This document shows positions 514-64,000 of a DNA stretch of 64,000 bases, one piece after another. Position numbers and translations under genes: made by a program. The notes under the pieces are model-generated. The model ran no database searches, had not been told where the DNA came from, and saw nothing but the letters and a program-made list of their open reading frames with translations. Each line of letters opens with the position of its first letter. The stretch's first letter is position 1. The stretch is from Paramoeba atlantica (taxonomy: Eukaryota; Protista; Discosea), in the NCBI GenBank assembly GCA_977017575.1, contig CDRNVI010000182.1, positions 62,001 to 126,000 of the forward strand, given 5' to 3'.

Positions 514-582
<69 letters not shown>

Positions 583-24153: not shown

Positions 24154-24271
24154 GTCTTCGGTCATACCCAGTTGAAAGCACCCGATCCCATCAGAACTCG
24201 GAAGTTAAGCAGCTGTGGGCTCGGTTAGTAGAATGGTGGGTGACCACATTCGAATCCCGAGTGCTGAAGAC
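24154..24271 (+). rRNA. 5S: 5S rRNA gene, copy 2
   Basis: Same sequence as copy 1, same aagaagagaaagt leader. Confidence 0.96.
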
Positions 24272-24603
24272 CTTCTCTTTTTCTTTTTTTCTTTTTTTCT
24301 TTTTCTTTCTTTTTCTTTCCCTTTTTTTCTTTTTCTTTTTTTCTTTCCCTTTTTTTTTAATTTTCTTTTTGTTGAAAAACAGGTCTGAGGAAAACACAAA
24401 TTTGATTCTGGTTCAGTCTTTTTCTTGTTATTCTATTTGCAGATCGTGGTATGCCTCCACACAAATATTTGAGAGAAAATATTCAAAATAAGGAGGGTGT
24501 GTTTTGTTATTTTTGGTTCCCTCTCTTCTTGATCATTTCACCCCCAAAAGATGTTCCACAAAAAAAGCAAAAAAGAGTTTTGAAGGCATAGAATTATTAT
24601 TAT

Positions 24604-32010: not shown

Positions 32011-32706
32011 TTGCAATTCAAAAAAAATCTTTTGTTGTGTTCTATCAAAGATTTTTCTTTCCTCTAGAGTTGGTTCTTAAAATACATTGAGTTGCTCAAT
32101 TCCCCTGTGTTCTTTGTGTGAGATCTTAAGAAACTTTTTCTTCCTTTTTATTTTCTTTACATTCTTCTTTTCCCCACTGATTCTACCTCAACCTTCTACT
32201 CCACCACCAAAATTGCTTCCAAACCTATCCCTCTCAATGCTTTTCTTCTTCATACAATGGATAGAAAATCTTCTTAACACTTCTACAATAATTAACTCTC
32301 TAGTGACTCCAATGTTGAGAATTTTTGATTGGTATTTTTTTATTTTGAAAAAGAAAAGCTTTGAGAGAAATGAACCTTGATTGGAATGAACATTTAAAAA
32401 AAAGAACTATATTTAACAATTTTTTTCTTTTTCTTTTTATTTTTTTCTTTTTGAAACTCCCTCACCTTATCAATAATATCACAAATTCTTTAAAAATTTA
32501 ATATTTGCAATGATTTATTGTTTTCTTTGAAAAAAACTCAAAAAAATTAATATAAAAGAAATAATTGTAAAAAAAAAAAATAAAAAATTAAACTGATTTC
32601 ATTAACTAGCTTGTTTTTTTGTTTTTTTAGAGATGAGTATGATAGTTTAATTGTCCTTTTCTTCAATTTTTCATTTTTGAGGTCTCAAGTTCAATTCTTT
32701 TAATTT

Positions 32707-35700: not shown

Positions 35701-38700
35701 AAAATTGTGTAAAAAATACAATTTTATTTGTAACTTGTCTGAAAATGAACTTTTAAACATCAAAAATTGAATAACAATTTTCTAAAAATGAAAATAATAC
35801 AAATAGACATTGAAAAAGTGATTGGAAAATAATCAAAAACAAAGGGAAATATGTTTTTTTTTTTGTAAATAAGTCAAATAGATTGTAAAATTGTGTAAAA
35901 AATACAATTTTATTTGTAACTTGTCTGGTAACTAAATTTTAAACATCAAAAACTAAATAATAATTTTCTAAAAAATGAAAATAATACAAATATTGATTTA
36001 TACATTGAAAAAAGTGATTGGGAAATAATCAAAAACAAAGGGAAATATGTTTTTTTTTTTGTAAATAAATCAAATAGATTGTAAAATTGTGTAAAAAATA
36101 CAATTTTATTTGTAACTTGTCTGAAAATGAACTTTTAAACATCAAAAATTGAATAACAATTTTCTAAAAATGAAAATAATACAAATAGACATTGAAAAAG
36201 TGATTGGAAAATAATCAAAAACAAAGGGAAATATGTTTTTTTTTTTGTAAATAAGTCAAATAGATTGTAAAATTGTGTAAAAAATACAATTTTATTTGTA
36301 ACTTGTCTGGTAACTAAATTTTAAACATCAAAAACTAAATAATAATTTTCTAAAAAATGAAAATAATACAAATATTGATTTATACATTGAAAAAAGTGAT
36401 TGGGAAATAATCAAAAACAAAGGGAAATATGTTTTTTTTTTTGTAAATAAATCAAATAGATTGTAAAATTGTGTAAAAAATACAATTTTATTTGTAACTT
36501 GTCTGAAAATGAACTTTTAAACATCAAAAATTGAATAACAATTTTCTAAAAATGAAAATAATACAAATAGACATTGAAAAAGTGATTGGAAAATAATCAA
36601 AAACAAAGGGAAATATGTTTTTTTTTTTGTAAATAAGTCAAATAGATTGTAAAATTGTGTAAAAAATACAATTTTATTTGTAACTTGTCTGGTAACTAAA
36701 TTTTAAACATCAAAAACTAAATAATAATTTTCTAAAAAATGAAAATAATACAAATATTGATTTATACATTGAAAAAAGTGATTGGGAAATAATCAAAAAC
36801 AAAGGGAAATATGTTTTTTTTTTTGTAAATAAATCAAATAGATTGTAAAATTGTGTAAAAAATACAATTTTATTTGTAACTTGTCTGAAAATGAACTTTT
36901 AAACATCAAAAATTGAATAACAATTTTCTAAAAATGAAAATAATACAAATAGACATTGAAAAAGTGATTGGAAAATAATCAAAAACAAAGGGAAATATGT
37001 TTTTTTTTTTGTAAATAAGTCAAATAGATTGTAAAATTGTGTAAAAAATACAATTTTATTTGTAACTTGTCTGGTAACTAAATTTTAAACATCAAAAACT
37101 AAATAATAATTTTCTAAAAAATGAAAATAATACAAATATTGATTTATACATTGAAAAAAGTGATTGGGAAATAATCAAAAACAAAGGGAAATATGTTTTT
37201 TTTTTTGTAAATAAATCAAATAGATTGTAAAATTGTGTAAAAAATACAATTTTATTTGTAACTTGTCTGAAAATGAACTTTTAAACATCAAAAATTGAAT
37301 AACAATTTTCTAAAAATGAAAATAATACAAATAGACATTGAAAAAGTGATTGGAAAATAATCAAAAACAAAGGGAAATATGTTTTTTTTTTTGTAAATAA
37401 GTCAAATAGATTGTAAAATTGTGTAAAAAATACAATTTTATTTGTAACTTGTCTGGTAACTAAATTTTAAACATCAAAAACTAAATAATAATTTTCTAAA
37501 AAATGAAAATAATACAAATATTGATTTATACATTGAAAAAAGTGATTGGGAAATAATCAAAAACAAAGGGAAATATGTTTTTTTTTTTGTAAATAAATCA
37601 AATAGATTGTAAAATTGTGTAAAAAATACAATTTTATTTGTAACTTGTCTGAAAATGAACTTTTAAACATCAAAAATTGAATAACAATTTTCTAAAAATG
37701 AAAATAATACAAATAGACATTGAAAAAGTGATTGGAAAATAATCAAAAACAAAGGGAAATATGTTTTTTTTTTTGTAAATAAGTCAAATAGATTGTAAAA
37801 TTGTGTAAAAAATACAATTTTATTTGTAACTTGTCTGGTAACTAAATTTTAAACATCAAAAACTAAATAATAATTTTCTAAAAAATGAAAATAATACAAA
37901 TATTGATTTATACATTGAAAAAAGTGATTGGGAAATAATCAAAAACAAAGGGAAATATGTTTTTTTTTTTGTAAATAAATCAAATAGATTGTAAAATTGT
38001 GTAAAAAATACAATTTTATTTGTAACTTGTCTGAAAATGAACTTTTAAACATCAAAAATTGAATAACAATTTTCTAAAAATGAAAATAATACAAATAGAC
38101 ATTGAAAAAGTGATTGGAAAATAATCAAAAACAAAGGGAAATATGTTTTTTTTTTTGTAAATAAGTCAAATAGATTGTAAAATTGTGTAAAAAATACAAT
38201 TTTATTTGTAACTTGTCTGGTAACTAAATTTTAAACATCAAAAACTAAATAATAATTTTCTAAAAAATGAAAATAATACAAATATTGATTTATACATTGA
38301 AAAAAGTGATTGGGAAATAATCAAAAACAAAGGGAAATATGTTTTTTTTTTTGTAAATAAATCAAATAGATTGTAAAATTGTGTAAAAAATACAATTTTA
38401 TTTGTAACTTGTCTGAAAATGAACTTTTAAACATCAAAAATTGAATAACAATTTTCTAAAAATGAAAATAATACAAATAGACATTGAAAAAGTGATTGGA
38501 AAATAATCAAAAACAAAGGGAAATATGTTTTTTTTTTTGTAAATAAGTCAAATAGATTGTAAAATTGTGTAAAAAATACAATTTTATTTGTAACTTGTCT
38601 GGTAACTAAATTTTAAACATCAAAAACTAAATAATAATTTTCTAAAAAATGAAAATAATACAAATATTGATTTATACATTGAAAAAAGTGATTGGGAAAT

Positions 38701-40483
38701 AATCAAAAACAAAGGGAAATATGTTTTTTTTTTTGTAAATAAATCAAATAGATTGTAAAATTGTGTAAAAAATACAATTTTATTTGTAACTTGTCTGAAA
38801 ATGAACTTTTAAACATCAAAAATTGAATAACAATTTTCTAAAAATGAAAATAATACAAATAGACATTGAAAAAGTGATTGGAAAATAATCAAAAACAAAG
38901 GGAAATATGTTTTTTTTTTTGTAAATAAGTCAAATAGATTGTAAAATTGTGTAAAAAATACAATTTTATTTGTAACTTGTCTGGTAACTAAATTTTAAAC
39001 ATCAAAAACTAAATAATAATTTTCTAAAAAATGAAAATAATACAAATATTGATTTATACATTGAAAAAAGTGATTGGGAAATAATCAAAAACAAAGGGAA
39101 ATATGTTTTTTTTTTTGTAAATAAATCAAATAGATTGTAAAATTGTGTAAAAAATACAATTTTATTTGTAACTTGTCTGAAAATGAACTTTTAAACATCA
39201 AAAATTGAATAACAATTTTCTAAAAATGAAAATAATACAAATAGACATTGAAAAAGTGATTGGAAAATAATCAAAAACAAAGGGAAATATGTTTTTTTTT
39301 TTGTAAATAAGTCAAATAGATTGTAAAATTGTGTAAAAAATACAATTTTATTTGTAACTTGTCTGGTAACTAAATTTTAAACATCAAAAACTAAATAATA
39401 ATTTTCTAAAAAATGAAAATAATACAAATATTGATTTATACATTGAAAAAAGTGATTGGGAAATAATCAAAAACAAAGGGAAATATGTTTTTTTTTTTGT
39501 AAATAAATCAAATAGATTGTAAAATTGTGTAAAAAATACAATTTTATTTGTAACTTGTCTGAAAATGAACTTTTAAACATCAAAAATTGAATAACAATTT
39601 TCTAAAAATGAAAATAATACAAATAGACATTGAAAAAGTGATTGGAAAATAATCAAAAACAAAGGGAAATATGTTTTTTTTTTTGTAAATAAGTCAAATA
39701 GATTGTAAAATTGTGTAAAAAATACAATTTTATTTGTAACTTGTCTGGTAACTAAATTTTAAACATCAAAAACTAAATAATAATTTTCTAAAAAATGAAA
39801 ATAATACAAATATTGATTTATACATTGAAAAAAGTGATTGGGAAATAATCAAAAACAAAGGGAAATATGTTTTTTTTTTTGTAAATAAATCAAATAGATT
39901 GTAAAATTGTGTAAAAAATACAATTTTATTTGTAACTTGTCTGAAAATGAACTTTTAAACATCAAAAATTGAATAACAATTTTCTAAAAATGAAAATAAT
40001 ACAAATAGACATTGAAAAAGTGATTGGAAAATAATCAAAAACAAAGGGAAATATGTTTTTTTTTTTGTAAATAAGTCAAATAGATTGTAAAATTGTGTAA
40101 AAAATACAATTTTATTTGTAACTTGTCTGGTAACTAAATTTTAAACATCAAAAACTAAATAATAATTTTCTAAAAAATGAAAATAATACAAATATTGATT
40201 TATACATTGAAAAAAGTGATTGGGAAATAATCAAAAACAAAGGGAAATATGTTTTTTTTTTTGTAAATAAATCAAATAGATTGTAAAATTGTGTAAAAAA
40301 TACAATTTTATTTGTAACTTGTCTGAAAATGAACTTTTAAACATCAAAAATTGAATAACAATTTTCTAAAAATGAAAATAATACAAATAGACATTGAAAA
40401 AGTGATTGGAAAATAATCAAAAACAAAGGGAAATATGTTTTTTTTTTTGTAAATAAGTCAAATAGATTGTAAAATTGTGTAAA
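32707..40483. repeat. Dimeric satellite: about 20.4 copies of a 382-bp unit made of related ~186- and ~196-bp monomers
   Basis: The gtctgaaaatg landmark at 33063 and 40321 is exactly 19 x 382 bp apart; alternating variants ctgaaaatgaac/ctggtaactaaa and aatagac/aatattgatttatac. Confidence 0.98.
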
Positions 40484-44774: not shown

Positions 44775-45734
44775 TTATTTCCGTCTTCTCTCCTTTGGAG
44801 GAGAATTGAAAAACTTCTTTTTTGAGCCATATGAGCGAGAAGAGTATCTCCGACAACCATCTTTTCCTTTTCTCTTATTCATAAACATTTTGTCTTTCTC
44901 TTCTTCTTCTTTTGGTTCAGTCGCCAACCTCTCTGTGATTTCTTCCAAATGCTTCTTGAGAATAATTTCTGTTTCCATCATCTTTTTTGACTTCTTTTCT
45001 TTCACTTCAAGATTACAAAGTCTTCTTTCGATGTTTCGTCGTTGGTTTTGAAGCTTTCTCGATTGCCCAAATGATCTTGGTTTACCATAATCTCTCTCTT
45101 CCTCCTCTTCCTCTTCTTCCTCAGACAATTGGATTTCTTCGATCCCCTCTTTCTCTTGTTTGTTGTCAACAATGTCGTCCTCTTGACTTTTCAAATCAAC
45201 AAGATTCTCTCGAACTTGAGTTTTGTTTTCAGTCAACTGTTCCTTTCTTTGTTGAAGAGCCACAATCTTTTCTTCAAGAACATCAATCTGATCTGCCAGT
45301 TTCTCATCACGTTTACTGAGCATTTCAATCTTCTTCTCTCTCTTCTGTTGTTCCTTGAGTCTTTTCTGAGGGTTCTCAGAAATCTCATCCCCCACTTTCT
45401 CTTCATCATCAGCCACTCGATTTTCAACCTCTTGGATCTCATTTTCGATTTTTTCTTTGACTTGACTCTCCACTGCTTTTGCTGTCTTGTTCTTTTTTGG
45501 GAGGACAAACAAAGCGTCTTCCAAGTCTCGATCACGTTTCACAAAGACAACATCACACTCATCATCAAGATAGAACACTCTTGAAGTTCCGTACACATCC
45601 TGGATCTTCCTTCGCAGACTTTGAAAATCTTGAGCTTGAATAGAACACACTTCTCCATTCTCAGTGTTTCGAACTTCCCACCACTGTTCTTCTCCTTCGA
45701 CAATAATTGACATCAATTGAACTCTCATCACCAT
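44775..45734 (-). CDS. PB1-like + coiled-coil protein, paralogue 2
   Basis: Intact 319-aa ORF, close paralogue of 24887-25915 with a different C-terminal tail. Confidence 0.75.
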   Translation of the reverse strand: MVMRVQLMSIIVEGEEQWWEVRNTENGEVCSIQAQDFQSLRRKIQDVYGTSRVFYLDDECDVVFVKRDRDLEDALFVLPKKNKTAKAVESQVKEKIENEIQEVENRVADDEEKVGDEISENPQKRLKEQQKREKKIEMLSKRDEKLADQIDVLEEKIVALQQRKEQLTENKTQVRENLVDLKSQEDDIVDNKQEKEGIEEIQLSEEEEEEEEERDYGKPRSFGQSRKLQNQRRNIERRLCNLEVKEKKSKKMMETEIILKKHLEEITERLATEPKEEEEKDKMFMNKRKGKDGCRRYSSRSYGSKKKFFNSPPKERRRK

Positions 45735-47849
45735 ATTGAATTGTTGTTGTTTTTCTGTTTCAAGTTATCCAGAAAAAGAAATGTTTTGAATTAAAAACAA
45801 AACCTGAGGGTGGCTGATTGTGTTTGTTGTCGTTCATGAGGGGTGTGGCGAGAAGGAACACCAATCACACAAACAAACAAAAAAAAAGAAATCACCGAAA
45901 GAACAACCAACAAAAAAAAAAAAGGAGTGCCCCAGCGGTTTTGAACCGCTTTTTTTCAGTGAAACCCAATTTTTTTTGTTTTGCGTTTTTTGGAAGGAAG
46001 AGAGAAGAGAAGAGAAGAGAAGAGAAGAGGAGAGGAGAGGAGAGGAGAGGAGAGAGGAGAGAGGAGAGAGGAGAGAGGAGAGGGGAGAGAGGAGAGGAGA
46101 GAGAGGAGAGAAGAGAGGAGAGAAGAGAAGAGAGAAGAGAGAAGAGAGAAGAGAGAAGAGAGAAGGGAGAAGAGAGAAGGGAGAAGAGAGAAGAGAGAAG
46201 AGAGAAGAGAAGAGAAGATATCAGCTTGGAGAGAGTAGCAACAACACATGCGCCGGAGCACCTGAAATCCAGGATACCCTTTTGACCAACTCATTTGAGC
46301 TTCTCTTTCCCACCCTCCCTCAACTCTCTGTCCCTCCTTCTTGCTGTTCTCAGAAAAAGTTTTCTCTTCTCCTCTTCCTTTCTCTTTCCTCTTTTTCTTT
46401 CCTTTTTCTTTCCTCTTCTTTTTCTTTCCTCTTTTTCTTTCCTCCTCTTTTTCTTTCTTTCCTCTTCTTTTTCTTTCTTTTTCTTTTTTTTGGCTTTTGC
46501 TCTTTTCTTTCCTTTTTTTTTTTTCTCATTCTTTCTCTTCCCTCTTTCCCTTTCTTTCTTTCTTTTCTCTTTCCTCTTTTTAAAATGGGAAATACAAAAA
46601 AAAGAATAAAAGCTTTCTCCTCCTTCACATTCTTTGTCATAAGATATATAGATGGTTGTTGTATCGATTTTATAGAGTATAAAAAGAAAAGAAAGAAAAG
46701 AAAGAATGAGAGGAAAAACAAAGGAAGAAAGGGAAAAAAGGTGAAGAGAGGGGAAATGATATGAAAAGAAAAGAAAAAAAGAGAAAAGAAAGAGAAGGAA
46801 AAAGGAGAAGGAGAAAAAAATAAAGAGGGAGATCTATGGTTCTTGGATGAGAAGAAAAACTGAAAAAAAAACCAAAAGAGAACAAAAGAAAGAAAAGAAA
46901 AGAAAAGAAAAGAAAGAAAAAGAGAAAAGAAAGAAAAAGAGAAAAGAGAAAAGAGAGAAGAGAAAAGAGAAATAAAAAGAGAAATAAAAAGAAATAAAAA
47001 GAGAAAAAAAGAAGAGAAAAAGAGAAAAAGAAAAGAAAGAGAAATAAAGAAATAAAAGAGAAATAAAGAAAGAGAAACAAAGAGGTGCAGTGGGGAGACA
47101 ATCAATACAGAGTTTGGTTTCTTCTTTTTTTCTTCTTTTTTTCTTTTTTTTTTCTTTTTTTTTTCTTTTTTTTTCTTTTTTTTTCTTTTTTTTTTCTCTT
47201 TTCTCTCTTTTCTCTCTTTTTTCTTCTTTTTTTCTCTTTTTTTCATATTTTTCTTTTTTCTCTTTCTTTTTTCCCTTTTTTTTTCTCTTTTTTTTTTTAC
47301 TTTTTCTCTCTTTTATTTCTCTTTTTATTCCTCCTTTTTTCTTTTTTTTCTTTTTTTTCTCTTTTTTTCATTTTTCTTTTCATTTCTCTTTTCATTTCTC
47401 TTTTCATTTCTCTTTTCATTTCTTTTTTTCTTTTTTTTTCTTTTTTTTCTCTTTCTTTCTTTTTTCTCTTTCTTTCTCTTTTCTCTTTCTTTCTCTTTTT
47501 TCTTTTTCTATTTCCCTTTCTACTTCTCTTTTTATTTCTCTTTTTTATTTCTCTTTTTTCTCTCTTTTTTCCCCTCTTTTTTTCTTTTTTTTCCTTTTTC
47601 TCTTTTCTCTTTTTTTTTCCTTTTTTTTCTCTTTTTTTTTCTCTTTTTTTTTTCTCTTTTTTTCTCTTTTTTTCTCTTTTTCTCTTTTTTTTTCTCTCTT
47701 TTTTTTCCTCTTTTTTCTCTTTTTTCTTTCTTTTTCTTTCTCTTTTATTTTTTATTTCTCTTTTTTTCTCTTTTTTCTTTTTTTCTCTTTACTTCTCTTT
47801 TTATTCACTCTTTTCTTTTTCTCTTTCTAATTATTTACATTGATTGTAC

Positions 47850-50800
47850 AAAGGGTATTGTCCTAGCACCCATGGCTCAAGGCTAAAGAAAATGCTCTAA
47901 TTCAATATGTCTGTTCAACTTTTCTACCGCTTTCTAAATAAAACTTCTTGTCCTCTGTCACATCTCTACCTCTCTTTTTGTTTTTTTATGTGCTTGAAAG
48001 TACTCGAGTGGGAACATCACCTCTGAGTGTTTATTCCAAAAGAAACAGTCAACAAAACAACACAGCCAAACAACAAAAACCATACTCAAATCCAAAAACA
48101 AAAACCAAAAACCAAAAACCAAAAACAGAGAAACCAGGAAGGAAAACAGAAACGAAGGAAGAAATCCAAAGCACCCCAGCTAGATGGAAGAGAGAACAAA
48201 AGAGAGATCCAAAGCAAGACAAAAAGGGGAAGGAAAGGACAAAGAGGGAAGCAAGAAGGAACAAAAGCCACACAAAGGCAAGGCAGATGCTCGAAGGTGA
48301 GGGAGCCACACCATCTTTGATCTCTTTCGGAGAGCTGCTGGATGAAGCCCTTGTGTGATGGGTTCCTCAGGAAATTCAACATCACGTATAATTTCATTGA
48401 GTTTCGTTCCTTCCAAGTTCCAAGAACTTGCAAAACTTCATTTGGATAATAAACTGAGATCCAGCCCTCCACCCAAGTGCCAATCAGCCCACAAGAGAAT
48501 CCAATCCTTACCCAAACACTTCTTCTGCTATCGCATGGTACATCATAAATGACACCAAAACTGTTGAAAAAATATCATTATATTTAATCTTAAGGAGAGA
48601 ACTAACCCTCAACATCAGCTTACAAACATCTACCCAAATATCTTGATGAGGCTCTTTGATAGAACTGGAAAGCTGAAATCCACTTTGCCTGCCAAGGTTC
48701 ATTGATCTGAAGGGGTCAGGGATGCCAGAGATGATCAACAGCCCTTGACCATTGTCAGAATGTGGAAAAATATTTCAAGTTATGTTGTGAACATGGTTTT
48801 GGTGACCTGTAAAACTTTTGTGTATCCTCGAAAAATATCTTCCATATGCGCTGAATTGGGCCAGAACCCTTCTTGTTATGCTTTTAGAAAGCACTGTGTC
48901 CCCAAACTTCTCAAGAGCCAGCTCTGCAATAAAAATCAACCATCCCAAAACAAATACCATCACTTACTATCTTCTCATTGAAGGGATCAGGAAAGCCAGA
49001 GATGGCATAGCGCTTTCTAAAAGCAGAACAGAAGGATTCTGGCAATTGTTTTCTCAATTCAGCACATATGGAAGATGTATTTTTCAAGGACGCTCGCGTT
49101 GTACAGGTCACTAAAACCATGTTTGCTACAGAACTTGAAGTATTTTTCATATTTTGACAATAGTCAAGGACTGTTGGTTCCTAAGCTTCTCAAGAGCCAA
49201 TTTCTTTCTCCAAACAGGCGGAGTTTGACGACAGGTGGCTGCTAAAGTCACCCAGAGAAGCCAAAAAGAAAACTCTCTCTCAGTTACACAAATTCAAATA
49301 ATGAACTTGCAGAGTGAAAAACAGATCCAAACAAATTCCAGCCAAAACCAATTGTTTTCTTAAGAGCATACAATTCCACACATCTCTGTGAATGACAGAG
49401 CTTCTCTGGAAAATTTGATGACCTCTCCATTCAACAGAAGCCATTCTACCATACAATACCATATCTGCCAAACAAATTTTAATAATTAGTAAAAATAAAT
49501 AAACCTCTTGATATTGTTAGAACCTCTGAAGCATCGAATATTCCAGTGAGGATTCCAGGGAATACAGGAATGTATCAAAGCAGAAACCAGATCAGAAAAA
49601 ATAACTTCTGTAGTGACCTCCAACTTGACAGCAAACCACAGTGGCATCTCCTCAAAAAAGAGAAGCACAATCCTGTTGTTAACCCAATGTAGGAAATAGA
49701 TCCAATCATCTCTCAAAAATACAACACTTTGTTATCCCCACAATAAACTCTTCCTCCAGGAATTTATTCACATGTTGGAGATACATTTCCTCTGCACATT
49801 TGTCATCGACAGCTGCATAGACAAAATCATCAATGTAAAATACTGAACAAAAGTCAACCTCCTCATGGTCCCTCTTGCGTAGTTCCAATAAAAAAGCATT
49901 GTTATCCTTCTCATGACTGAATCTTGAATCCCCAGAGGGGTTTGCAGGCTGAGCAAGTGTGATATGACCGGAGAAAAGGTTGAGCCAAATACAAGCCAAT
50001 GTGCTTCAACATTCACCATTTCTCTTCACCCATTGATAGATTGTTGGTGTTACCAAACTCATTAGGTCTGGAATAACAAATGAGTGAGAAGAGATTTGAT
50101 ACATCAAAAAAAAAGAAGAAAACATCCTGATTACCATTAAAAATGTATTTCTTTTCCTCTGGGGAGAATAAACAAAACGATTTTGGTTTTATCCCCAAAC
50201 ACCCAGGTTTGCCAAAGCTCATTCTAACATGTTATCAACTACATCAGAGTGTCCATACAAATCAAAGTAGACTCCTCGAATATCATCATTGTATCACTTT
50301 CAACACCCTCTTTTCACCATTGTCACTCTCTTCATCCTCTCCAAACACATCCCCTCACAACCCAAACTTTGAAAACAGTCACCTGGAACCCAGGTGCTAT
50401 TCCTACCCCAATCTCCATTCCTTTACACCCTGGTCTCTCCCACGATCACCAAACATTACCAGAGTCATAATTTCGGTCCATTCCCCATGATAATTCCGAT
50501 CACTCCAACGATCTTTATATCCATCACCCACAGTCATAACAATGGTCACTACCACAAACAAAATCACGTTCACAATCTTGGTAACAAGCTGAGTCATAAC
50601 CTTTGTCTCTCTCAACCCCATCAACTCTCTTTTGAGTAACTTCCTCTTCTGAAGAAAAATTCTCTTGGGCACTTTCGAAATATTGCCATAAGCTCTTAGA
50701 TCTATCACCACATACGAGCACTTCTTCTCTGAATTTGAACAGAAAGACATCGCAGCGAACCACACATATATTTGCACCACAAAAGACTTTGCAGCTCTTT

Positions 50801-55489: not shown

Positions 55490-55607
55490 GTCTTCGGTCA
55501 TACCCAGTTGAAAGCACCCGATCCCATCAGAACTCGGAAGTTAAGCAGCTGTGGGCTCGGTTAGTAGAATGGTGGGTGACCACATTCGAATCCCGAGTGC
55601 TGAAGAC
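55490..55607 (+). rRNA. 5S: 5S rRNA gene, copy 3
   Basis: Same sequence as copies 1 and 2. Confidence 0.96.
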
Positions 55608-55902
55608 CTTCTCTTTTCTTCTTTTTTTCTTTTTCTTTCTTTTCCTTTCCCTTTTTTTTGAATTTTCTTTTTGTTGAAAAACAGGTCCGAGAAAAACACA
55701 AATTTGATTTTGGTTCAGTCTTTTTCTTGTTATTCTATTCACAGATTGTGGTATGCCTCCACACAAATATTCGAGAGAAAATATTCAAAATAAGGAGGGT
55801 GTGTTTTGTTATTTTTGGTTCCCTCTCTTCTTGATCATTTCCCCCCGAAAGATGTTCCACAAAAGCAAAAAAAGAGTTTTGAAGGCATAGAATTATTATT
55901 AT

Positions 55903-56197: not shown

Positions 56198-57169
56198 CTA
56201 TTTCCATCTTTTTTCCTTTGGGGGAGAATAATTCTTTTTGGGAGAACCACGAGAGTAACGGGAATGTTTACAACGACCATCTTTTCCTTTTCTCTTATTC
56301 ATAAAAAACTTCTCATCCTTCTGTTCTTCTGATTGTTCTTCCACTTCAGTCAGGGCCAACCTCTCCGTGATTTCTTCCAAACGCCTCTTGAGAATAATTT
56401 CTGTTTCCATCATCTTTTTTGACTTCTTTTCTTTCGCTTCAAGATTACAAAGTCTTCTTTCGATGTTCCGTTGTTGATTCTGAAGTTTTCTCAATTGTCC
56501 AAACAATCTTGGTTTACCACAATCTTCTTTTTCCTCTTCCTCTTCCTCTTCTTCCTCAGACAATTGGATTTCTTCAATCCCCTCTTCCTCTTGTTTGTTG
56601 TCAGCAATGTCGTCCTCTTGACTTTTCAAATCAACAAGATTCTCTCGAACTTGGGTTTTGTTTTCAGTCAACTGTTCCTTTCTTCGTTGGAGGGCCACAA
56701 TCTTTTCTTCAAGAACATCGATTTGATCTGCCAGTTTCTCATCACGTTTACTGAGCATTTCAATCTTCTTCTCTCTCTTCTGTTGTTCCTTGAGTCTTTT
56801 CTGAGGGTTCTCAGAAATCTCATCCCCCACTTTCTCTTCATCATCATCCACTCGATTTTCGACCTCTTGGATTTCATTTTCGATTTCTTCTTTGACTTGA
56901 CTCTCCACCACTCTTGTTGTCTTGTTCTTTTTTGGGAGAACAAACAAAGCGTCTTCCAAGTCTCGATCACGTTTCACAAAGACGACATCACACTCATCAT
57001 CAAGATAGAACACTCGAACCGCAGTTGAAGTTCCGTACACATCCTGGATCTTCCTTCGCAGACTTTGAAAATCTTGAGCTTGAATCGAACACACTTCTCC
57101 GTTCTCAGTGTTTCGAACTTCCCACTCTCCTTCTCCTTCGACAATCGACATCAACTGAACTCTCATCAT
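56198..57169 (-). CDS. PB1-like + coiled-coil protein, paralogue 3
   Basis: Intact 323-aa ORF with FYLDDECDVVFVKRDRDLEDAL. Confidence 0.75.
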   Translation of the reverse strand: MMRVQLMSIVEGEGEWEVRNTENGEVCSIQAQDFQSLRRKIQDVYGTSTAVRVFYLDDECDVVFVKRDRDLEDALFVLPKKNKTTRVVESQVKEEIENEIQEVENRVDDDEEKVGDEISENPQKRLKEQQKREKKIEMLSKRDEKLADQIDVLEEKIVALQRRKEQLTENKTQVRENLVDLKSQEDDIADNKQEEEGIEEIQLSEEEEEEEEEKEDCGKPRLFGQLRKLQNQQRNIERRLCNLEAKEKKSKKMMETEIILKRRLEEITERLALTEVEEQSEEQKDEKFFMNKRKGKDGRCKHSRYSRGSPKKNYSPPKEKRWK

Positions 57170-57967
57170 TGTGTTGTTGTTGTTTTTTCTGTTTCAAGTT
57201 ATCCAGAAAAAGAAATGTTTTGAATTAAAAACAAAACCTGCCTGAGGGGTGGGGTGGTTGATTGTGTTTGTTGTCGTTCATGAGGGAATGAGAGGGGATG
57301 TGGCGAGAAGGAACACCAATCACACAAACAAACAAAAAAGAAATCACCGAAAGAACAACCAACACACACCGAAAAAAGAACAACAAAAAAAAAGAGAACC
57401 CACCGGGTTCGATTCTGGGTGGGTTTTTTTTTTCAGTGAAACCCAATTTTTTTTTTGTTTTGCGTTTGGAGAGAAGAGGAATGAGAAAGAGGAGAGAGAG
57501 AAGAGAGAGAAGAGAGAGAAGAGAGAAGAGAGAGAAAGAGAGGAGAGAAGAGAGAGAAGAAAAGAGAGAGAAGAGAGAGAAGAGAGAGAAGAAAGAAGAG
57601 AGAAGAGAGGAAGAGAGAGAGAAGAGAGAGAGAAGAGAGAGAGAAGAGAGAGAGAAATGGTCCATACATTCAGGAAGTGGTTGGGAGAAGGGGGGGGGGA
57701 GGAAGGAAGAGGGGACAGATGAGAAAGAGGTGGTTGTGTGCGTTCCCCATTAATGTATTTTTGGTCTTCTCTTTTGCTGGTTGTCCTCAGAAAAAGTTTT
57801 CTCTTCTTCTCTTCTCTCTTTTCTTTCTTTTTTCTCTCTTTTCTTTCTCTTCTCTTCTCTCTTTTCTTTCTCTCTTCTCTTCTCTCTTTTCTTTCTCTTT
57901 TTCTTTCTCTTTCTCTTTCTCTTTTTCCTTCTCTTTTTCTTTTTCTTTCTTTTTCTTTCTTTTTTTT

Positions 57968-57999
<32 letters not shown>

Positions 58000-58428
58000 C
58001 TTTTTTTTTCCCTTTCTTTCTCTTCCCTCTTTCCCTTTCTTTCTTTCTTTTATTGAATTTTGAGACTGGAAAAATGAGAACAATGAGAGAAAAGCACCAT
58101 TTAAGGAGTGTTGTTCCCTTCAGATAAACAAAGATAATTGAAAAAAAATTCATTCCAACAAGATAATTGAAAAAATCAATAAAAAAGAACATAATTGAAT
58201 CCAAAAATCATTTATATGAAAAAAAAATTCAAAAATCATCACAAAATTACTTTCAATTTTCACCCAAGGTGGCTTGAACTCATTGCCCACCATTTGGCTG
58301 GAATGTCACAGTTACTGTTACAGGAGGGGTTTCTGTTGGTGGTTGTGCGGTTTCAGCTTGCTCGGATTCAACGATCCGGTTGGCACGTTCACCTGCGGCT
58401 CGTTCAGAATCTTCATAATATCCATGAG

Positions 58429-58855
58429 GTTGGCGCCTGTAGTTTAGTTGTAAATTCAACTATGTCCAACCCCGGGGGGGCGAGTTCAAATCCCAGTTTT
58501 TCGATATTATAGAAAATTTTTCTGGTGCTGTAGAGTGATTTGATTGGAGTGAGGAGCTCTTGAAGAAGTGTGAAAATTGGAACAGGTTACATCTCAGCCC
58601 TGTCTGCTAAAAAGTTGAGGATAAATTCCCTTAGAAGGAGCTTTGGATTATTCTCCCTTTTGATGTGCATCCTCCAGCCTGAACTTGCAGAAGTTCTAAA
58701 GTTCAGCATAAAGACCGACTGAACTAAGCTGAAGTTTAAAACTTCACCTTTCGTTAGAGGTTAAAAAAAAACAAACATAATTTAATGTAATTCAAATGGC
58801 TTAGATTAAGAACTACTAATTGAATAAAGTCTGCCTCAAAAAGAAAAAAAAAAAA
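58429..58855 (+). mobile_element. tRNA-like SINE / poly(A) retroposon inserted in the YR gene
   Basis: 17-bp TSD ttcataatatccatgag at 58412-58428 and 58856-58872; A-box-like tagtttagttg (58440), B-box-like gagttcaaatcc (58482), AATAAA (58823), A-tail 58838-58855. Confidence 0.88.
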
Positions 58856-59976
58856 TTCATAATATCCATGAGCAACCCGCTCGCTTGTCCACCCACCAGA
58901 CACCATCAATTGGTCTGTGGTGCCTCCTCCTTCCACCATGGCAGTGGCTCCCGACTGATGAAAACTGTGTGATGCATAATTTTCTTCAGGCTTCTTGAGA
59001 AAACATGCTATTTTCTTTGCCAATTTCGCAAGATAGTTTTTTCCTAAGTGCTGAGCTGCAAAGTTCTCTCGGTTCTTGTTCCACTTCCACCAAAGGCAAG
59101 TACCAGGGGGGAGGTTCTCCAGGTGATCCTCCAACGCTTCAGAAGGAATAAACCCATCAAGCACAGGGATGACCACTTTGGTTTTCCTCAAAGATTTCGA
59201 TTTTGCGCACCGTTCCATGGTGAAGCATACACTCCCATTTTTCTTTAACTTCACTTCATCACGAGAAATGTTAATAACTTCAACACTTCTGGCTAATCCA
59301 AAGAAAGCAAAAAGAGCCAACAGAGAGTCTTGTAGATCTCCCCCATTCATTATCCCTCAAGACAAATATTGTTTTATCTCCTCCAAGGTAAAAACATTCT
59401 TCTTATTTGGCTGATAACCAGCTGTTTCTCCCTTTAGGATTTGATTTAACTGCTGAGTCTCACTGAAATCAATTGCATATTTACACAAAACATAGCGTTT
59501 CACGAGCGAAATCACTGGAAAGAATGATGACAATCCGTAAACACAGTTGCCATTTCGATGAGAAAGGACAAACAAATATTTTTGGTAAAACTCGATCAAC
59601 AATGCCTCATTTATCACATAATCTCGGTGTTCTTCCTCATTTTTTTTATAAAAACATGTCAAGAAATCCTTGAAACGACTTGCAGCAGTCAGGAACGCCT
59701 TTCAAGTCACATGCGGGCCATTCAACACCATCCGAACAGAATGGCATGTGGAGTCAAATTCAAAGTGGTTCCATTCCTTCGCTCGGAGGGACACAATCAG
59801 TGGGTTTTCCACTCTTCATGCAGGGTTCATCTCTTGCAAGAAAATGAAAAAATGCCCACAAGGCTTTTTCTTTCAATTGTTGTCACACAATCGTCCCAAA
59901 ACAAACTCAAACCAATCAAAATACACCATATTTATTGCTCTCATTTTTCCCAGCCTCAAAATTCAATAAAATGTTG

Positions 59977-60139
59977 TAGCCAATGTTTGAAAAGGCTTAT
60001 CATGTCTTGAGTGTTTCTGATCAGTCTCAACCAGGATTCTGTGGTCTCATGCCGCAAGCGGCCCTTGACCTCAAAAATCCTGGGTCTTGACATCAAAAAC
60101 ACCCTTGACAATAAACTGCCTTTTTTCAAACATTGGCTA
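59977..60139. repeat. 163-bp imperfect palindrome centred on GCCGC-AA-GCGGC
   Basis: Arms begin tagccaatgtttgaaaa / ttttcaaacattggcta and pair along their whole length with regular internal mismatches. Confidence 0.9.
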
Positions 60140-61589
60140 AATAGCTATTCTCTTTCCTCTTTTTGAGAGACAAAAAAAAAAGAATAAAAGCTTTTCTCTC
60201 CTCTACATTCTTTGTCCTTTCAGAAGTATCTCATCACATGTATAGATGGTGATGGTTGTATTGACTTTATAGGTGTTCTATTTTGGCAATTCAATATCCT
60301 AGAGAGTATGAAAAGAACCCTTTCATCAAAACAAAATTCTCATCAGAGAAAATCCATCCAAAGATGAGAAGAAAGAGTTAAAGGAGGAAAAAAGGCTGAC
60401 TGTTGGATCCAAAAACCTGAAACATTCAGAAAAAGAAAAGAAAGAAAAGAAAGAATGAGAGGAAAAACAAAGGAAGAAAAAGGGGGGAAAATAGAAAAAG
60501 GTGAAGAGAGGGGGAAATGATATGAAAAGAAAGAAAAAAAGAGAAAAGAAAGAGAAAAAAAAAAGAAAAAGGAGAAAGGAGAAAGGAGAAAAAAAATAAA
60601 GAGGGAGATCTATGGTTCTTGGATGGGAAGAAAAACTGAAAAAAAAAACCAAAAGAGAACAAAAGAAAGAAAAAAAAAGAAAAGAATGAGAAAGAGAAAG
60701 AGAAAAGAGAAAAGAGAAATAAAAAGAGAAAAGAGAAAAGAGAAATAAAAAGAGAAAAAAAGAAGAGAAAAAGAGAAAAAGAAAAGAAAGAGAAATAAAG
60801 AAATAAAAGAGAAATAAAGAGAAAAAAAAAAGAGAAACAAAGAGAAACAAAGAGATGTGGTGGGGAGACAATCAATACACACATTTTTTCAATTCTCTTT
60901 TCATTTCTTTTTTTTCTTTTTTTTTCTTTTTTTTTCTTTCTTTTCTCTCTTTTTCTCTCTTTCTATTTTCATTTCTATTTCTCTTTTATTTCTCTTTTTC
61001 TCTCTTTTTTTTCTTTTTTTTTTCTCTTTTTTTTCTTTTTTTCTCTTTTTTCTCTTTTTTCTCTTTATTTCTTTTTATTTTTCTCTTTTATTTTTCTCTT
61101 TTATTTTTCCCTCTTTTTTTCTTTTTTTCCCTTTTTCTCTTTTCTCTTTTTTTTTCCCCCTTTTTTTTCTCTTTTTTTTCTCTTTTCTCTTTTCTCTTTT
61201 ATTTCTCTTTTATTTCTCTTTTTTTTCTTTTTCACTTTTTTTTTGCTTTTTTTTCCCCTTTTTTTCTATTTTTTCTCTCTTTCTTTTATTTTTTATTTCT
61301 CTTTTTTTCTCTTTTTTTCTTTTTTCTCTTTTACTTCTCTTTTTATTTCACTCTTTTCTTTTTCTCTTTCTAATTCAAGGATTTGTCATTGGGAAAAAAA
61401 AGAGAAAAAAGACAAAGAAAAAAAGACAAAGAAAAAAAGACAAAGAAAAAAAGACAAATAAAAAGACAAAAAAAAAAGACAAAAAAATAAAGAAAATTAA
61501 AAGAGAGAATGTTTGGTTTCGAGGAGCTGACATTGCAAATATCTTTTATTTGTTGGTTTTTTCTGATTGTTCAACTTTTCTACTGTCTT

Positions 61590-64000
61590 TCTAAATAAAA
61601 CTTCTTGGCCTCTGTCACATCTCCACCTCCTCTCTTTTTGTTTTTTTATGTGCTTGAAAGTACTCAAGTAACACCCCTGAGCGTTTATTCCAAAAAGAGA
61701 CAGTCAACAAAACAACACAGCCAAACAACAAAAAACCATACTCAAATCCAAAAACAAAATCCAAAAATCCAAAACAGACAAAAAGAATGGGAAGAAAATA
61801 GAAACAAAGAGACAAGGAAGGAAGAAATCCAAACCAGCACAAGAGATGGAGGAGAGAACAAAGAGAGATCCAAAGCAAGACAAAAAGGGGAAGGAAAGGA
61901 CAAAGAGGGAAGCAAGAAGGAACAAAAGCCACACAAAGGAAAGGCAGATGCTCAAAGGCGGGGAGCCACACCATCTTTGATCTCTTTCGGAGAGCTGCTG
62001 GATGAAGCCCTTGTGCCTGGAGATGGTTTCCTCAGGGAATTCAACACCACTTATGAATAATTCATTGAGTTTCATTCCTTCCAAGTTCAAGAGCTTGTAA
62101 AACTTCATTTGGATAATTCCAATCATTCATAAACTGAGATCCAGTTGACTTAAATCATGCCAAGTATGCCAATAAACGATCCCAACTCTTCATTTAAGGG
62201 TCAATCAGTCCACAAGAGAATCCAATCCTTACCCAAATATTTTTTTTGCTATCGCATGGTACATTATAAATGACACCAAAACTGTTGAAAAAAATATCAT
62301 TATATTAAATCTTAAGGAGAGTACTAACCCTCACATTCTGCCACATAGATATCAACATCAGTCATAAACATCTATCCAAATATCCTGATGAGGCTCTTGT
62401 GGTCAGAACTGGAAAGTTGAAATCCACTTTGCCTGCCAAAGTTCATTGATCTGAAGGGGTCAGGGATGCCAGAGATGATCAACAGCCCTTGGCCATTGTC
62501 AGAATGTGGAAAAATACTTCAAGTTATGTTGTGAACATGGTTTTGGTGACCTGTAAAACTTTTGTGTATCCTCGAAAAATATATCTTCCATATGCGCTGA
62601 ATTGGGCCAGAATCCTTCTGTTGTGCTTTTAGAAAGCACTGTGTCCCCAAACTTCTCAAGAGCCAGCTCTGCAAGAAAAATCAGCCATACCAAAACAAAT
62701 ACCATCACTTACTCCAAACAGGGGGAGTTTGCTTGCAGAGTGAAAAACAGATCCAAACAAATTCCAGCCAAAACCAATTGTTTTCTTAAGAGCATACAAT
62801 TCCACATATCTCTTGCGATGACAGAGTTTCTCAGGAAAATTCAATGACTTCACCATACAATATACCATATCTGCCAAACAAATTTTGAGAATCAGTAAAA
62901 ATAAACCTCTTAATATTGTTAGAACCTCTGAAAAGCATTGAATATTCCAGTGAGGACTCCAGGGAATACAGGAATGTATCAAAGCAGAAACCAGATCAGA
63001 AAAAATAACTTTTGTAGTGACCTCTAACTTCTTGACAGCAAACCACAATGACATCTCCTCAAAAAAGAGAAACACAATCCTGTTGTTAACCCCCAATGTA
63101 GGAAATAGATCCAATCATCTCTCAAAAATGCAACACTTTGCTATCCCCACAATAAACTCTTCCTCATCGATAGCTGTATAGACAAAATCATCAATGTAAA
63201 ATACTGAACAAAAGTCAACCTCCTCATGGTCCCTCTTGCATAGTTCCAATAAAAAAGCGTTGTTATCCTTCTCATGACTGAATCTTGAATCCCCAGAGGG
63301 GCTTGTAGTGATATGACCAGAGAAAAGGTCGAGCCAAATACAAGCCAATGTGCTTTGTCATTCGCCATTTCTCTTCACCCATTGATAGATTGTTGGTGTT
63401 ACCAAACTCATTAGGTCTAGAATAACAAATGAGTGAGAAGAGATTTGATACATCAAAAGAAAAGAAGAAAACATCCTGATTACCATTAAAAATGTATTTC
63501 TTTTCCTCTGGGGAGAATAAACAAAACGATTTTGGTTTTATCCCCAAACACCCAGGTTCGCCAAAGCTCATTCTAACATGTTATCAACTACATCAGAGTG
63601 TCCATACAAATCAAAATAGACTCCTCGAACATCATCATTGTATCACTTTCAACACCCCCTTTTCATCATTGCCACTCTCTTCATCCTTTCCAAACACATC
63701 CCCTCACAACCCAAACTTTGAAACACCTGGAACCCCAGGTGCTATTCCTACCCCAATCTCCATTCCTTTACACCCTGGTCTCTCCCACAATCATTAAACA
63801 TTACCAAAGTCATAATTTCAGTCCATTCCCCATGATAATTCCGATCACTCTAATGATCTTTATATCCGTCACCCCACAGTCATAATAATGGTCATGACCA
63901 CAAACAAAATCATGTTCATAATCTTGGTAACGAGCTGAGTCATAACCTTTGTCTCTCTCTCAACCTCATCAACTCTCTTTTGAGTGACTTCCTCTTCTGA
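61590..64000 (-). mobile_element. DIRS-like relic, copy 2 (runs off window)
   Basis: Collinear with 47930-50650; FYIDDF at 63115-63348; additional small deletions. Confidence 0.7.

What the first reader, a model, noticed from the sequence alone, without database searches (positions are those of the whole stretch)
58052..60149. YR-only element with ends defined by an empty paralogous site and a long subterminal hairpin
The paralogous flank at 46548-46581 reads ccctttctttctttctttt|ctctttcctcttttt. Here those two halves are separated by 2098 bp, or about 1.65 kb once the SINE and one TSD are removed. The insert encodes only a tyrosine recombinase and has TATT at both junctions (58051-54, 60146-49), which fits the short direct repeats of Crypton-type elements. 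Unusually, a 163-bp fold-back ends 10 bp from the right terminus, and the left end carries 2-3 copies of aagataattgaaaaaa. This could be a distinct hairpin-ended YR element.
Basis: partly seen in the sequence, partly recalled or inferred. Interest (0 to 1): 0.8.

Follow-up and report, generated by a model that had tools for sequence, protein, structure and literature searches.

The report
Hairpin-bearing tyrosine-recombinase transposon, dead copy
This is a dead copy of a small mobile DNA element that encodes only a tyrosine recombinase. It belongs to a widespread lineage I could not find described, whose members all carry the same 10-base end motif, a long structured hairpin and a pair of inverted repeats, which gives a concrete way to test how such "Crypton-like" elements move.

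Summary
Compared with the paralogous site at 46548-46581, window 58052-60149 is a clean 2098-bp insertion, 1655 bp without a nested SINE. It encodes only a tyrosine recombinase (YR), on the minus strand. A 163-nt palindrome ends 10 nt from one terminus.

This copy is dead. It has three CGA-to-TGA stops, the box II Arg is lost, and a SINE sits in the catalytic-Tyr codons.

It pairs the far terminus with an internal site 5 nt beyond the palindrome.

The same layout recurs in eight relatives, down to about 30% protein identity:
- 5' AATAG(CTATT)
- a 115-172-nt hairpin with phased tandem G.A mismatches
- CAACA
- inverted-repeat arm
- YR gene
- inverted-repeat arm ending in AA

The relatives include an intact, recently active pair from the same organism (99.3% identical, unrelated flanks).

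If the ends are joined as in a circle, the crossover lies at the edge of a bubble in a 230-290-nt quasi-palindrome.

The papers I could search describe Cryptons as having no inverted repeats or hairpins. I rate this a new structural variant of Crypton-type elements. The mechanism is inferred, not shown. An earlier first-stage note (s1-389384) describes what is probably the intact relative elsewhere in this genome.

The parts
58052..60149 (-). Whole inserted unit (2098 bp; 1655 bp without the SINE and one target duplication). Position ambiguous by 2 nt because TT (AA in gene orientation) is shared with the target.
   Evidence: Alignment to empty paralogous site 46516-46580. The termini match the family-conserved ends.
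60140..60149 (-). 5' terminal 10-mer AATAGCTATT, itself a perfect palindrome. The inferred crossover is at AA|TAGCTATT.
   Evidence: The exact 10-mer occurs once per locus, always directly 5' of the hairpin, in L001, L005, L012, L013 and L014. L004 starts at ATAGCTATT. Variants are AATAGATGTT (L002) and AATAGTCTT (L007).
59977..60139 (-). 163-nt imperfect hairpin/palindrome. It carries CpG-decayed relics (TCAAGG, TTGAGA) of six same-strand YCGAGR motifs spaced about 21 nt apart, which face each other as internal loops.
   Evidence: DNA fold z = -8.2. Motif positions are given and loop contents. Against L002 there are 14 compensatory pair changes.
59972..59976 (-). Conserved spacer CAACA between the hairpin and the internal inverted-repeat arm.
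   Evidence: CAACA in the window copy, L002 and L004; CACAG in L005; CAATA in L007; CAGCA in L012.
59934..59971 (-). Internal inverted-repeat arm (IR-L), starting TTTTATTGAAT in gene orientation.
   Evidence: 38 nt, 92% complementary to 58048-58084. Arms in the equivalent position occur in L002, L004, L005, L007 and L013.
58280..59830 (-). Decayed YR coding region. Likely start is MNPA at 59830. In-frame TGA stops lie at 59816-18, 59702-04 and 59357-59, with one more upstream at 59873-75. The box II Arg-Arg codons now read His-Gln (58955-58960). The frame is split by the SINE at the HGYY codons. The stop is at 58280-82.
   Evidence: L003 has CGA where the window has TGA. PF00589 gives only 15.8 bits here but 39-43 bits in relatives.
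58429..58855 (+). Nested A-tailed SINE with a perfect 17-bp target duplication (58412-58428 and 58856-58872). It is a later insertion and not part of the element.
   Evidence: repeat family D4. The frame is restored when it is removed.
58131..58199 (+). Three subterminal copies of ATAATTGAA (58134, 58163, 58191), spaced 28-29 nt. This is the same core as the terminal arm (TATTGAA). They are candidate accessory recombinase-binding sites.
   Evidence: The motif also occurs in the 3' region of L002 and L049.
58052..58084 (-). Terminal inverted-repeat arm (IR-R). In gene orientation the element ends ...AAAATTCAAT(AA).
   Evidence: In the joined-ends fold it pairs with IR-L as a 35-bp outer stem.
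46548..46581 (.). Paralogous empty site. In gene orientation it reads ...gagAAaagaaag..., with a single AA where the filled site has AA at both junctions.

Best explanation
Window 58052-60149 is an inactivated copy of a small (about 1.5-2.2 kb) DNA transposon that encodes only a Cre-like tyrosine recombinase.

It belongs to a lineage with a fixed architecture, written in gene orientation:
- 5' AA|TAGCTATT
- an imperfect hairpin of 115-172 nt with up to three tandem G.A mismatch loops about 21 nt apart
- CAACA
- inverted-repeat arm IR-L (TTTTAT...)
- the YR gene
- subterminal repeats
- inverted-repeat arm IR-R, ending ...ATAA 3'

Shown:
- The whole unit, hairpin included, is what inserted.
- It sits at an A-rich site, with AA at both junctions and a single AA in the empty site.
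- An intact relative in the same organism has moved recently.
- This copy decayed afterwards: CpG-biased mutation made CGA-to-TGA stops and removed the box II Arg, and a SINE then landed in the catalytic-Tyr codons.

Inferred:
- The element excises as a circle. Joining the ends puts IR-R, the 8-10-nt core, the hairpin, CAACA and IR-L side by side, forming one 230-290-nt quasi-palindrome.
- The recombinase binds the paired or symmetric IR arms and exchanges strands at AA|TAG, at the edge of the asymmetric bubble, with an AA in the target.
- The hairpin, whose unpaired purine motifs lie on the sense strand only, acts as a folded (cruciform or single-strand) part of the attachment site or as its accessory scaffold.
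For: Insertion against the empty paralog, with boundaries on the conserved termini.

YR identity:
- 470 relatives at E <= 1e-3; the family keeps R, H-x-x-R, W and Y invariant or nearly so.
- PF00589 scores 39-43 bits in relatives.
- The family profile hits Cre box II at E = 1e-6.
- The AF2 model (pLDDT 84) matches Cre over both domains, TM 0.62-0.75.

Architecture repeated in relatives:
- L002, L004, L005, L007, L012 and L013/L014 all show it.
- The exact 10-mer occurs once per locus, at the same spot.
- Hairpin fold z-scores run from -6.6 to -13.5.
- Six phased same-strand GAGR motifs form C[GA]G/C[GA]G loops. Counts are 46 on the top strand against 7 on the bottom.
- Pairwise comparisons show 5-14 compensatory pair changes, for example 14 between L002 and the window copy and 8 between L005 and L004.

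Hairpin is inside the mobile unit:
- L002 and L049 are 99.3% identical over AATAATAG...GATTAA, with unrelated flanks.
- Contigs L004 and L014 begin and end exactly at the element termini.

Joined-ends folds: in all six elements tested the junction falls at the stem/bubble boundary, with dG from -73 to -114 kcal/mol.

Decay of this copy:
- CpG observed/expected is 0.51 here against 1.0 in L003.
- CpG-to-TpG/CpA differences run 19:3 against this copy.
- TGA here corresponds to CGA in L003.

Tree: the window YR sits in a clade with 99% SH-aLRT support in which 6 of 8 members were examined and all 6 have the hairpin.
Against: - No circle junction, excision footprint or transcript was observed.
- The shared junction repeat is only 2 nt. 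That is shorter than the 4-6 bp of described Cryptons and the 6-8 bp overlap of typical YR sites, so the exact crossover is uncertain.
- Only one true empty site is available, and it is a paralog (about 85% identical), not an allele.
- Palindromy can be kept up by template switching or gene conversion, so compensatory changes are weaker evidence for a functional fold than they would be for an RNA.
- Top- and bottom-strand fold energies differ by only 1.5-6 kcal/mol, and in two of eight hairpins not in the top strand's favour.
- Two decayed copies in the same organism (L003, L006) lack the hairpin. They are truncated or diverged, so they neither support nor refute.
- A distant YR clade (L050) places its hairpin inside true terminal inverted repeats and has no 10-mer. 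The layout is therefore not universal in the wider family.
- The hosts of the relatives are unknown (metagenome and Logan contigs).
Confidence: 0.8

Rival explanations
1. It is an ordinary Crypton: a double-stranded circle recombines with a short target match. The hairpin and inverted repeats take no part in recombination chemistry. They would serve expression (promoter, leader or terminator), replication of the excised circle, or host silencing.
For: - The hairpin always lies upstream of the gene and in the sense orientation.
- Chlamydomonas Cryptons insert by a short donor/target match and rise in copy number by an unknown route (PMC9977147).
- The protein is a plain two-domain Cre-like YR with no extra domain.
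Against: - The crossover point lies 8-10 nt from the hairpin base in every element.
- It coincides with the stem/bubble boundary of the joined-ends fold.
- The 10-mer next to the hairpin is conserved down to 30% protein identity.
- A perfect 160-nt hairpin in a 5' leader would be expected to hinder translation.
- No Rfam family matches.
Confidence: 0.3
2. The palindrome is an independent fold-back element or MITE that inserted beside a YR element. The 2098-bp 'insert' would then be two events.
For: The inverted repeat (58052-84 / 59934-71) by itself would delimit a shorter unit that excludes the palindrome.
Against: - The hairpin sits at the same place, with the same 10-mer and spacer, in eight diverged elements and diverges along with them.
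- Two 99.3%-identical copies share it up to the same 5' boundary.
- There is no other copy of the palindrome in the window.
Confidence: 0.02
3. Paralog A lost this segment by deletion. The element is older than the duplication and its ends are not defined by the comparison.
For: The flanks are low-complexity CT-rich DNA that is prone to slippage, and the paralogs differ by other indels.
Against: - The breakpoints coincide to within 2 nt with termini defined independently in other loci.
- The flanks match 47/49 and 16/16 right up to the junction.
Confidence: 0.03
4. The in-frame TGAs are sense codons (a variant genetic code) and the gene is intact apart from the SINE.
For: All five in-frame stops are TGA, with no TAA or TAG.
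Against: - L003 has CGA at the one alignable position, and relatives have Arg at the others.
- The conserved box II Arg is also lost.
- The CpG-decay bias is 19:3.
- Other long reading frames in the window end in TGA as well as TAA and TAG.
Confidence: 0.03

Closest known systems
Crypton DNA transposons (CryptonF, S, A and I; Goodwin 2003; Kojima & Jurka 2011, PMC3212892)
   Same: - Eukaryotic, small, and encode only a tyrosine recombinase, with no reverse transcriptase or DDE transposase.
- Inserted without a conventional target duplication.
- A short repeat at both ends is also present once in the empty site.
- A circular intermediate is presumed.
   Different: - Described Cryptons have 'neither terminal inverted repeats nor long direct repeats', only 4-6-bp direct repeats. 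Animal Cryptons show no terminal repeats at all.
- Here there is a conserved 10-bp palindromic end motif, a 115-172-nt hairpin, a 25-57-nt inverted repeat and subterminal repeats. The shared repeat is only AA.
- No GCR1_C or DUF3504 domain was detected.
- Relatives found here come only from metagenome or Logan assemblies, and none is named.
Cre/loxP (phage P1)
   Same: Best sequence and structure match:
- box II H-x-x-R, then W, then Y
- a two-domain fold, TM 0.62-0.75.
   Different: - loxP is a simple 34-bp site (13-bp inverted repeats around an 8-bp spacer).
- Here the inverted arms are 25-57 nt and are separated, in the joined form, by about 180 nt of hairpin plus an asymmetric 8-10 / 5-nt bubble.
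- Protein identity to Cre is only 13-14%.
Folded single-strand recombination sites of bacterial tyrosine recombinases: integron attC with IntI, and CTX-phage attP(+) with XerCD (from established knowledge)
   Same: - An imperfect hairpin with conserved unpaired bases that differ between the two strands.
- The crossover lies at the edge of an unpaired region at the base of a stem.
- Recombination is with an unstructured duplex target that shares very little homology.
   Different: - There is no evidence here for a single-stranded stage.
- The hairpin is much longer, and its unpaired features are tandem G.A pairs rather than extrahelical bases.
- The protein resembles Cre more than IntI (IntI structure 2a3v ranks 44th).
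- The host is a eukaryote.
DIRS1-type retrotransposons (inverted terminal repeats plus an internal complementary region)
   Same: - A tyrosine-recombinase element in which an internal sequence is complementary to a terminus.
- A circle is the presumed integrating form.
   Different: - There is no reverse transcriptase, RNase H or methyltransferase. 1.65 kb holds one gene.
- The internal complementary arm pairs with one terminus only and abuts a hairpin.
Tn916/Tn1549-type conjugative transposon integrases
   Same: - YR-mediated excision to a circle.
- Integration into AT-rich targets with little or no homology in the overlap region.
   Different: - Those are bacterial and large, and carry an extra N-terminal arm-binding domain.
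- They have no hairpin module.
- The structural match is weaker than to Cre (ranks 48-50).

Membership tests
Tyrosine recombinase / phage-integrase superfamily (PF00589, Cre-like) | Catalytic R ... H-x-x-R ... H/W ... Y | tested here: met
   The family alignment A4 (45 sequences) has R188, H292 and Y327 invariant, and R295 and W318 in at least 90%. The intact relative P0153 has all of them. The window copy itself fails: H-x-x-R reads H-x-x-H, and a SINE splits the frame within the HGYY (catalytic-Tyr) codons.
Tyrosine recombinase / phage-integrase superfamily (PF00589, Cre-like) | Pfam PF00589 at or above its gathering score of 27.1 bits | tested here: met
   Relatives P0007, P0009, P0021 and P0025 score 39-43.6 bits. 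The window fragment scores only 15.8 bits and P0153 scores 20.7 bits.
Tyrosine recombinase / phage-integrase superfamily (PF00589, Cre-like) | Two-domain fold: a helical core-binding domain plus the catalytic domain | tested here: met
   The AF2 model of P0153:36-409 has pLDDT 84.3 and pTM 0.78. The top 27 PDB matches are Cre or Tre, with TM 0.60-0.76 over 330-340 columns.
Crypton (YR-only DNA transposon) | Encodes a YR and no reverse transcriptase or DDE transposase | tested here: met
   There is one reading frame in 1655 bp. The same holds in L002, L004, L005, L007 and L013.
Crypton (YR-only DNA transposon) | Short (4-6 bp) direct repeat at both termini that matches the target | tested here: inconclusive
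Only AA is shared, seen in the window copy against its empty site and at the L002 and L049 junctions.
Crypton (YR-only DNA transposon) | No terminal inverted repeats or other long terminal structure (as the family is described) | tested here: not met
   There is a 25-57-nt inverted repeat plus a 115-172-nt hairpin in every full-length member examined. For the published descriptions.
Crypton (YR-only DNA transposon) | Group markers: GCR1_C (CryptonF), conserved C-terminal region with TATGG termini (CryptonS), DUF3504 (CryptonA-derived) | tested here: not met
   Pfam finds only PF00589. The termini are AATAG... and ...ATAA. A tree with curated Crypton references could not be built because no reference sequences were available.
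Crypton (YR-only DNA transposon) | Circular excised intermediate | not testable with these tools
DIRS / Ngaro / VIPER YR retrotransposons | Reverse transcriptase and RNase H genes; split direct repeats, or inverted terminal repeats plus an internal complementary region | tested here: not met
   There is no RT frame in the element. Only one terminus has an internal complement.
Telomere resolvase (protelomerase) systems | Cleavage at the dyad of a palindromic site, giving hairpin ends; a large multi-domain enzyme | tested here: not met
   The integration junction is 10 nt outside the palindrome, not at its dyad. The protein is about 400 aa and Cre-like.
Folded-hairpin att sites (integron attC, CTX attP(+)) | The recombination site is formed by a folded single strand, with strand-specific unpaired bases | tested here: inconclusive
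   The hairpin, its strand-specific G.A loops and a junction at a bubble edge are all present. No evidence exists for or against a single-stranded substrate.

The most novel reading that the evidence does not exclude
A eukaryotic transposon lineage whose Cre-like recombinase uses a folded DNA hairpin as its attachment site, either a cruciform or a single strand of the excised circle. Strand choice would be set by phased tandem G.A mismatches, and strand exchange would occur at the edge of an asymmetric bubble. This would be a eukaryotic counterpart of integron attC and CTX-phage integration, and the first mechanistic handle on Crypton-type transposition.
Probability: 0.3. Interest if true: 0.9.

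Novelty: new variant of a known kind. Interest (0 to 1): 0.72.

Why it matters
Cryptons are the least understood class of eukaryotic DNA transposons. Their ends are usually undefinable, and their mechanism rests on analogy.

This lineage has sharply defined, deeply conserved cis elements:
- a 10-bp palindromic core
- a hairpin with phased G.A mismatches
- inverted arms
- subterminal repeats

An intact and apparently recently active copy exists in the same organism. That makes binding, cleavage and circle-junction experiments straightforward to design.

The signature also gives annotators a DNA-level marker for finding such elements, and any non-autonomous derivatives, where protein searches fail.

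If the hairpin proves to be a folded recombination substrate, structure-specific tyrosine recombination, so far a bacterial speciality, would extend to eukaryotes.

Tried and rejected
That used the only call, so there is no read evidence for circles, empty alleles or transcripts.
- phmmer of the window fragment against the PDB gave nothing meaningful.
- The search for related loci with the wide alignment A1 failed because it had no conserved stretch. With A2 it returned only 5 metagenome loci, one of them informative.
- The protein scan of viral contigs found nothing.
- The DNA-signature scan of viral contigs gave 33 hits, all spurious. They have no hairpin (dG -1 to -20 kcal/mol), no YR gene, and the same phage sequence recurs.
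- MAFFT plus RNAalifold on the hairpins failed because the sequences are too diverged to align. I used pairwise structure-projected counts instead.
- Rfam gave no match.
- Variant genetic code (TGA as sense): rejected.
- Palindrome as a separate MITE: rejected.
- Telomere-resolvase reading: rejected.
- A kinetoplastid host, suggested by earlier notes: the 5' end of the SSU rRNA is of the ordinary eukaryotic type as far as I recall kinetoplastid sequences. The host remains unidentified.
- The literature searches found no description of a YR-only eukaryotic element with this architecture. Repbase reports could not be searched.
Full report
**What is in the window.** The window is eukaryotic nuclear DNA. 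It holds an 18S rRNA gene at 1-1864 and three 5S genes, and is 33% G+C. The finding lies in copy B of a segmental duplication, 44776-48000 against 56199-61660, which is 81-92% identical outside low-complexity DNA.

A gap-tolerant alignment of the two copies puts A 46516-46564 on B 58001-58049 (47/49) and A 46565-46580 on B 60148-60163 (16/16). B therefore carries 2098 extra bases, 58052-60149, with 2 nt of positional ambiguity because TT occurs on both sides.

Inside this stretch is a later insertion: an A-tailed SINE at 58429-58855 with a perfect 17-bp target duplication. Removing it and one duplicate leaves 1655 bp and restores one long minus-strand frame.

**The gene.** The frame is a tyrosine recombinase. 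An exhaustive HMMER search with the 166-aa catalytic piece found 470 relatives at E <= 1e-3. The relatives read SHSFRRSGAT...GGW...Y. In a 45-sequence alignment the Arg of box I, the His of box II and the Tyr are invariant, and the box II Arg and the Trp are present in at least 90%. Relatives pass the Pfam PF00589 threshold. The family profile hits box II of Cre at E = 1e-6. An AlphaFold model of the intact relative (pLDDT 84) superposes on Cre over both domains, TM 0.62-0.75.

**This copy is dead.**
- It has three in-frame TGAs inside the homologous coding region and one more upstream. All fall where relatives have Arg.
- At the one position that can be aligned at DNA level, the sister copy L003 reads CGA.
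- Box II Arg-Arg now reads His-Gln.
- The SINE sits in the HGYY codons.
- CpG observed/expected is 0.51 here against 1.0 in L003. CpG-to-TpG/CpA differences run 19:3 against the window copy.
- A variant genetic code is therefore rejected.

A 38-nt, 92% inverted repeat joins the far terminus (58048-58084) to an internal site (59934-59971) that lies 5 nt beyond the palindrome. In gene orientation the element reads:
- AATAGCTATT
- the 163-nt hairpin
- CAACA
- arm IR-L
- the gene
- three phased ATAATTGAA repeats
- arm IR-R

**The decisive test: do other copies share this?**

Locus L001, from a public metagenome assembly, is the same locus as the window (99.3% identical).

On the same contig, L002 carries an intact 409-aa YR of a sister subfamily with the same layout. 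It has AATAGATGTT, a 172-nt hairpin, CAACA, and a 26-nt arm whose partner lies 3' of the gene.

L049 is a second copy of that element, 99.3% identical over 1.58 kb and with unrelated flanks. The shared span runs from AATAATAG, upstream of the hairpin, to GATTAA. The hairpin is therefore inside the mobile unit, and the subfamily moved recently.

Five further elements come from other samples, with YRs 28-52% identical. All show the same order of parts:
- L004 and L014 are contigs that begin and end exactly at the element ends.
- L005, L007, L012 and L013 show the element within flanking sequence.
- The exact 10-mer AATAGCTATT is present in four of the five (L005, L012, L013/L014). L004 starts at ATAGCTATT and L007 has the variant AATAGTCTT.

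In a maximum-likelihood tree the window YR lies in a clade with 99% SH-aLRT support. Six of its eight members were examined and all six have the hairpin. L013's protein lies in a neighbouring clade.

A more distant clade (L050) has 81-nt true terminal inverted repeats, with a hairpin just inside one of them and no 10-mer. The module is thus older than this layout, but the layout is not universal.

Two decayed copies in the same organism (L003, L006) are truncated or diverged and carry no information on this point.

**The hairpin.**
- All hairpins fold far better than shuffled controls, z = -6.6 to -13.5.
- Counted from the terminal A, GAGR motifs lie at about 45, 66 and 88 on one arm and about 109, 131 and 151 on the other. 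They are always on the sense strand: 46 copies against 7 on the other strand.
- Because both arms carry the motif in the same 5'-to-3' sense, the motifs cannot pair with each other. They form symmetric internal loops C[GA]G / C[GA]G. From established knowledge, the 5'-pyrimidine-GA-purine-3' context is the one that favours stable tandem sheared G.A pairs in DNA.
- In the window copy the same positions read C[AA]G or T[GA]G. These are CpG-decayed relics.
- Pairing is kept through 5-14 double substitutions in pairwise comparisons. Palindromes can also be homogenised by template switching, so this is supportive rather than conclusive.

**Junctions and a working model.**

In gene orientation the filled sites read:
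- window: gag[AA]TAGC...TTCAAT[AA]aagaaag
- L002: ...aaaaaa[AA]TAATAG...GATT[AA]agaaaa
- L049: ...tatttt[AA]TAATAG...GATT[AA]taaata

The window's empty paralog reads gagAAaagaaag. This fits recombination between an AA at the joined ends of the element and an AA in an A-rich target, with no target duplication. That is the Crypton model, with a very short match.

I joined each element's 3' end to its 5' end in silico and folded the sense strand. In all six elements tested the result is one long quasi-palindrome with three parts:
- an outer stem of IR-R paired with IR-L
- an asymmetric bubble, with TAGCTATT opposite CAACA
- the inner hairpin

The junction lies exactly at the boundary between the outer stem and the bubble.

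What is shown is the geometry and its conservation. The rest is inferred: a circular intermediate, recombinase binding to the arms and the subterminal repeats, and use of the hairpin as a folded substrate or scaffold.

**Comparison with what is known.** The papers I could search describe Cryptons as lacking inverted repeats and long terminal structure, with only 4-6-bp direct repeats. Animal Cryptons are reported to have no terminal repeats at all (PMC3212892, PMC8969392, PMC13465315, PMC3627910). Active Chlamydomonas Cryptons fit the short-match model (PMC9977147).

No GCR1_C or DUF3504 domain is present. Rfam has no match. The closest relatives come only from metagenome or Logan assemblies and none is named.

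By function and gene content this is a Crypton-type element. By its cis architecture it does not fit the family as described. I therefore file it as a new structural variant.

The nearest mechanistic analogies are bacterial: integron attC with IntI, and CTX-phage attP(+) with XerCD. These are resemblances only.

An earlier first-stage note on another piece of this genome (s1-389384) describes a stand-alone recombinase cassette with 26-bp inverted repeats and an abutting hairpin, which is probably the L002-type element. The scan has therefore seen this before on other DNA, but as far as the index shows it was not followed up.

**Verdict.** This copy is a relic. Its value is that it has an empty-site control and led to the definition of the lineage.

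Noticed in passing
window 58429-58855 (target duplications 58412-28 and 58856-72): An A-tailed SINE of about 427 bp with a tRNA-like head that ARAGORN does not call. It has a perfect 17-bp target duplication and is inserted in the catalytic-Tyr codons of the recombinase. No second copy exists in the window.
   Followed up: partly
window 44776-48000 and 56199-61660: A segmental duplication that carries a PB1-domain gene (44775-45734 and 56198-57169, 85% identical). Copy B has a further extra stretch of about 171 bp at 60217-60429.
   Followed up: partly
window 1-1864, 12041-12159, 24154-24272, 55490-55608: The 5' part of an 18S rRNA gene lies at the window edge. Three 5S rRNA genes with identical Rfam scores (102.8 bits each) are dispersed among transposons.
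   Followed up: no
window 32000-40000: About 8 kb at 18% G+C with steady positive GC skew, unlike the rest of the window. This could be a satellite or other AT-rich repeat.
   Followed up: no
L012:243-361: A second hairpin of about 120 nt abuts the AATAGCTATT end of the element from outside. It could be a remnant of another element, or a sign that hairpins are preferred targets.
   Followed up: no
L050:44-301 and 2360-2440: A YR element from a distant clade has 81-nt true terminal inverted repeats. Their outer end resembles the arm of L005. A 178-nt hairpin built of tandem units lies just inside the left repeat, and there is no 10-mer.
   Followed up: partly
L051:4-94 and L005:185-200: The hairpin interiors are rich in GAGCGAAG and GCGAAGC units. 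From memory, GCGAAGC is known as an unusually stable DNA mini-hairpin.
   Followed up: no
L002:5440-5525: A tRNA-like sequence on the minus strand about 70 nt 3' of the intact element. It could be a tRNA gene or a SINE head.
   Followed up: no
L006:3100-3127 and 4978-5003: A decayed third-subfamily copy without a hairpin is flanked on both sides by the same AAAAATAAAAATAAAAATTAAATTA stretch. This could be a long duplication or microsatellite context.
   Followed up: no
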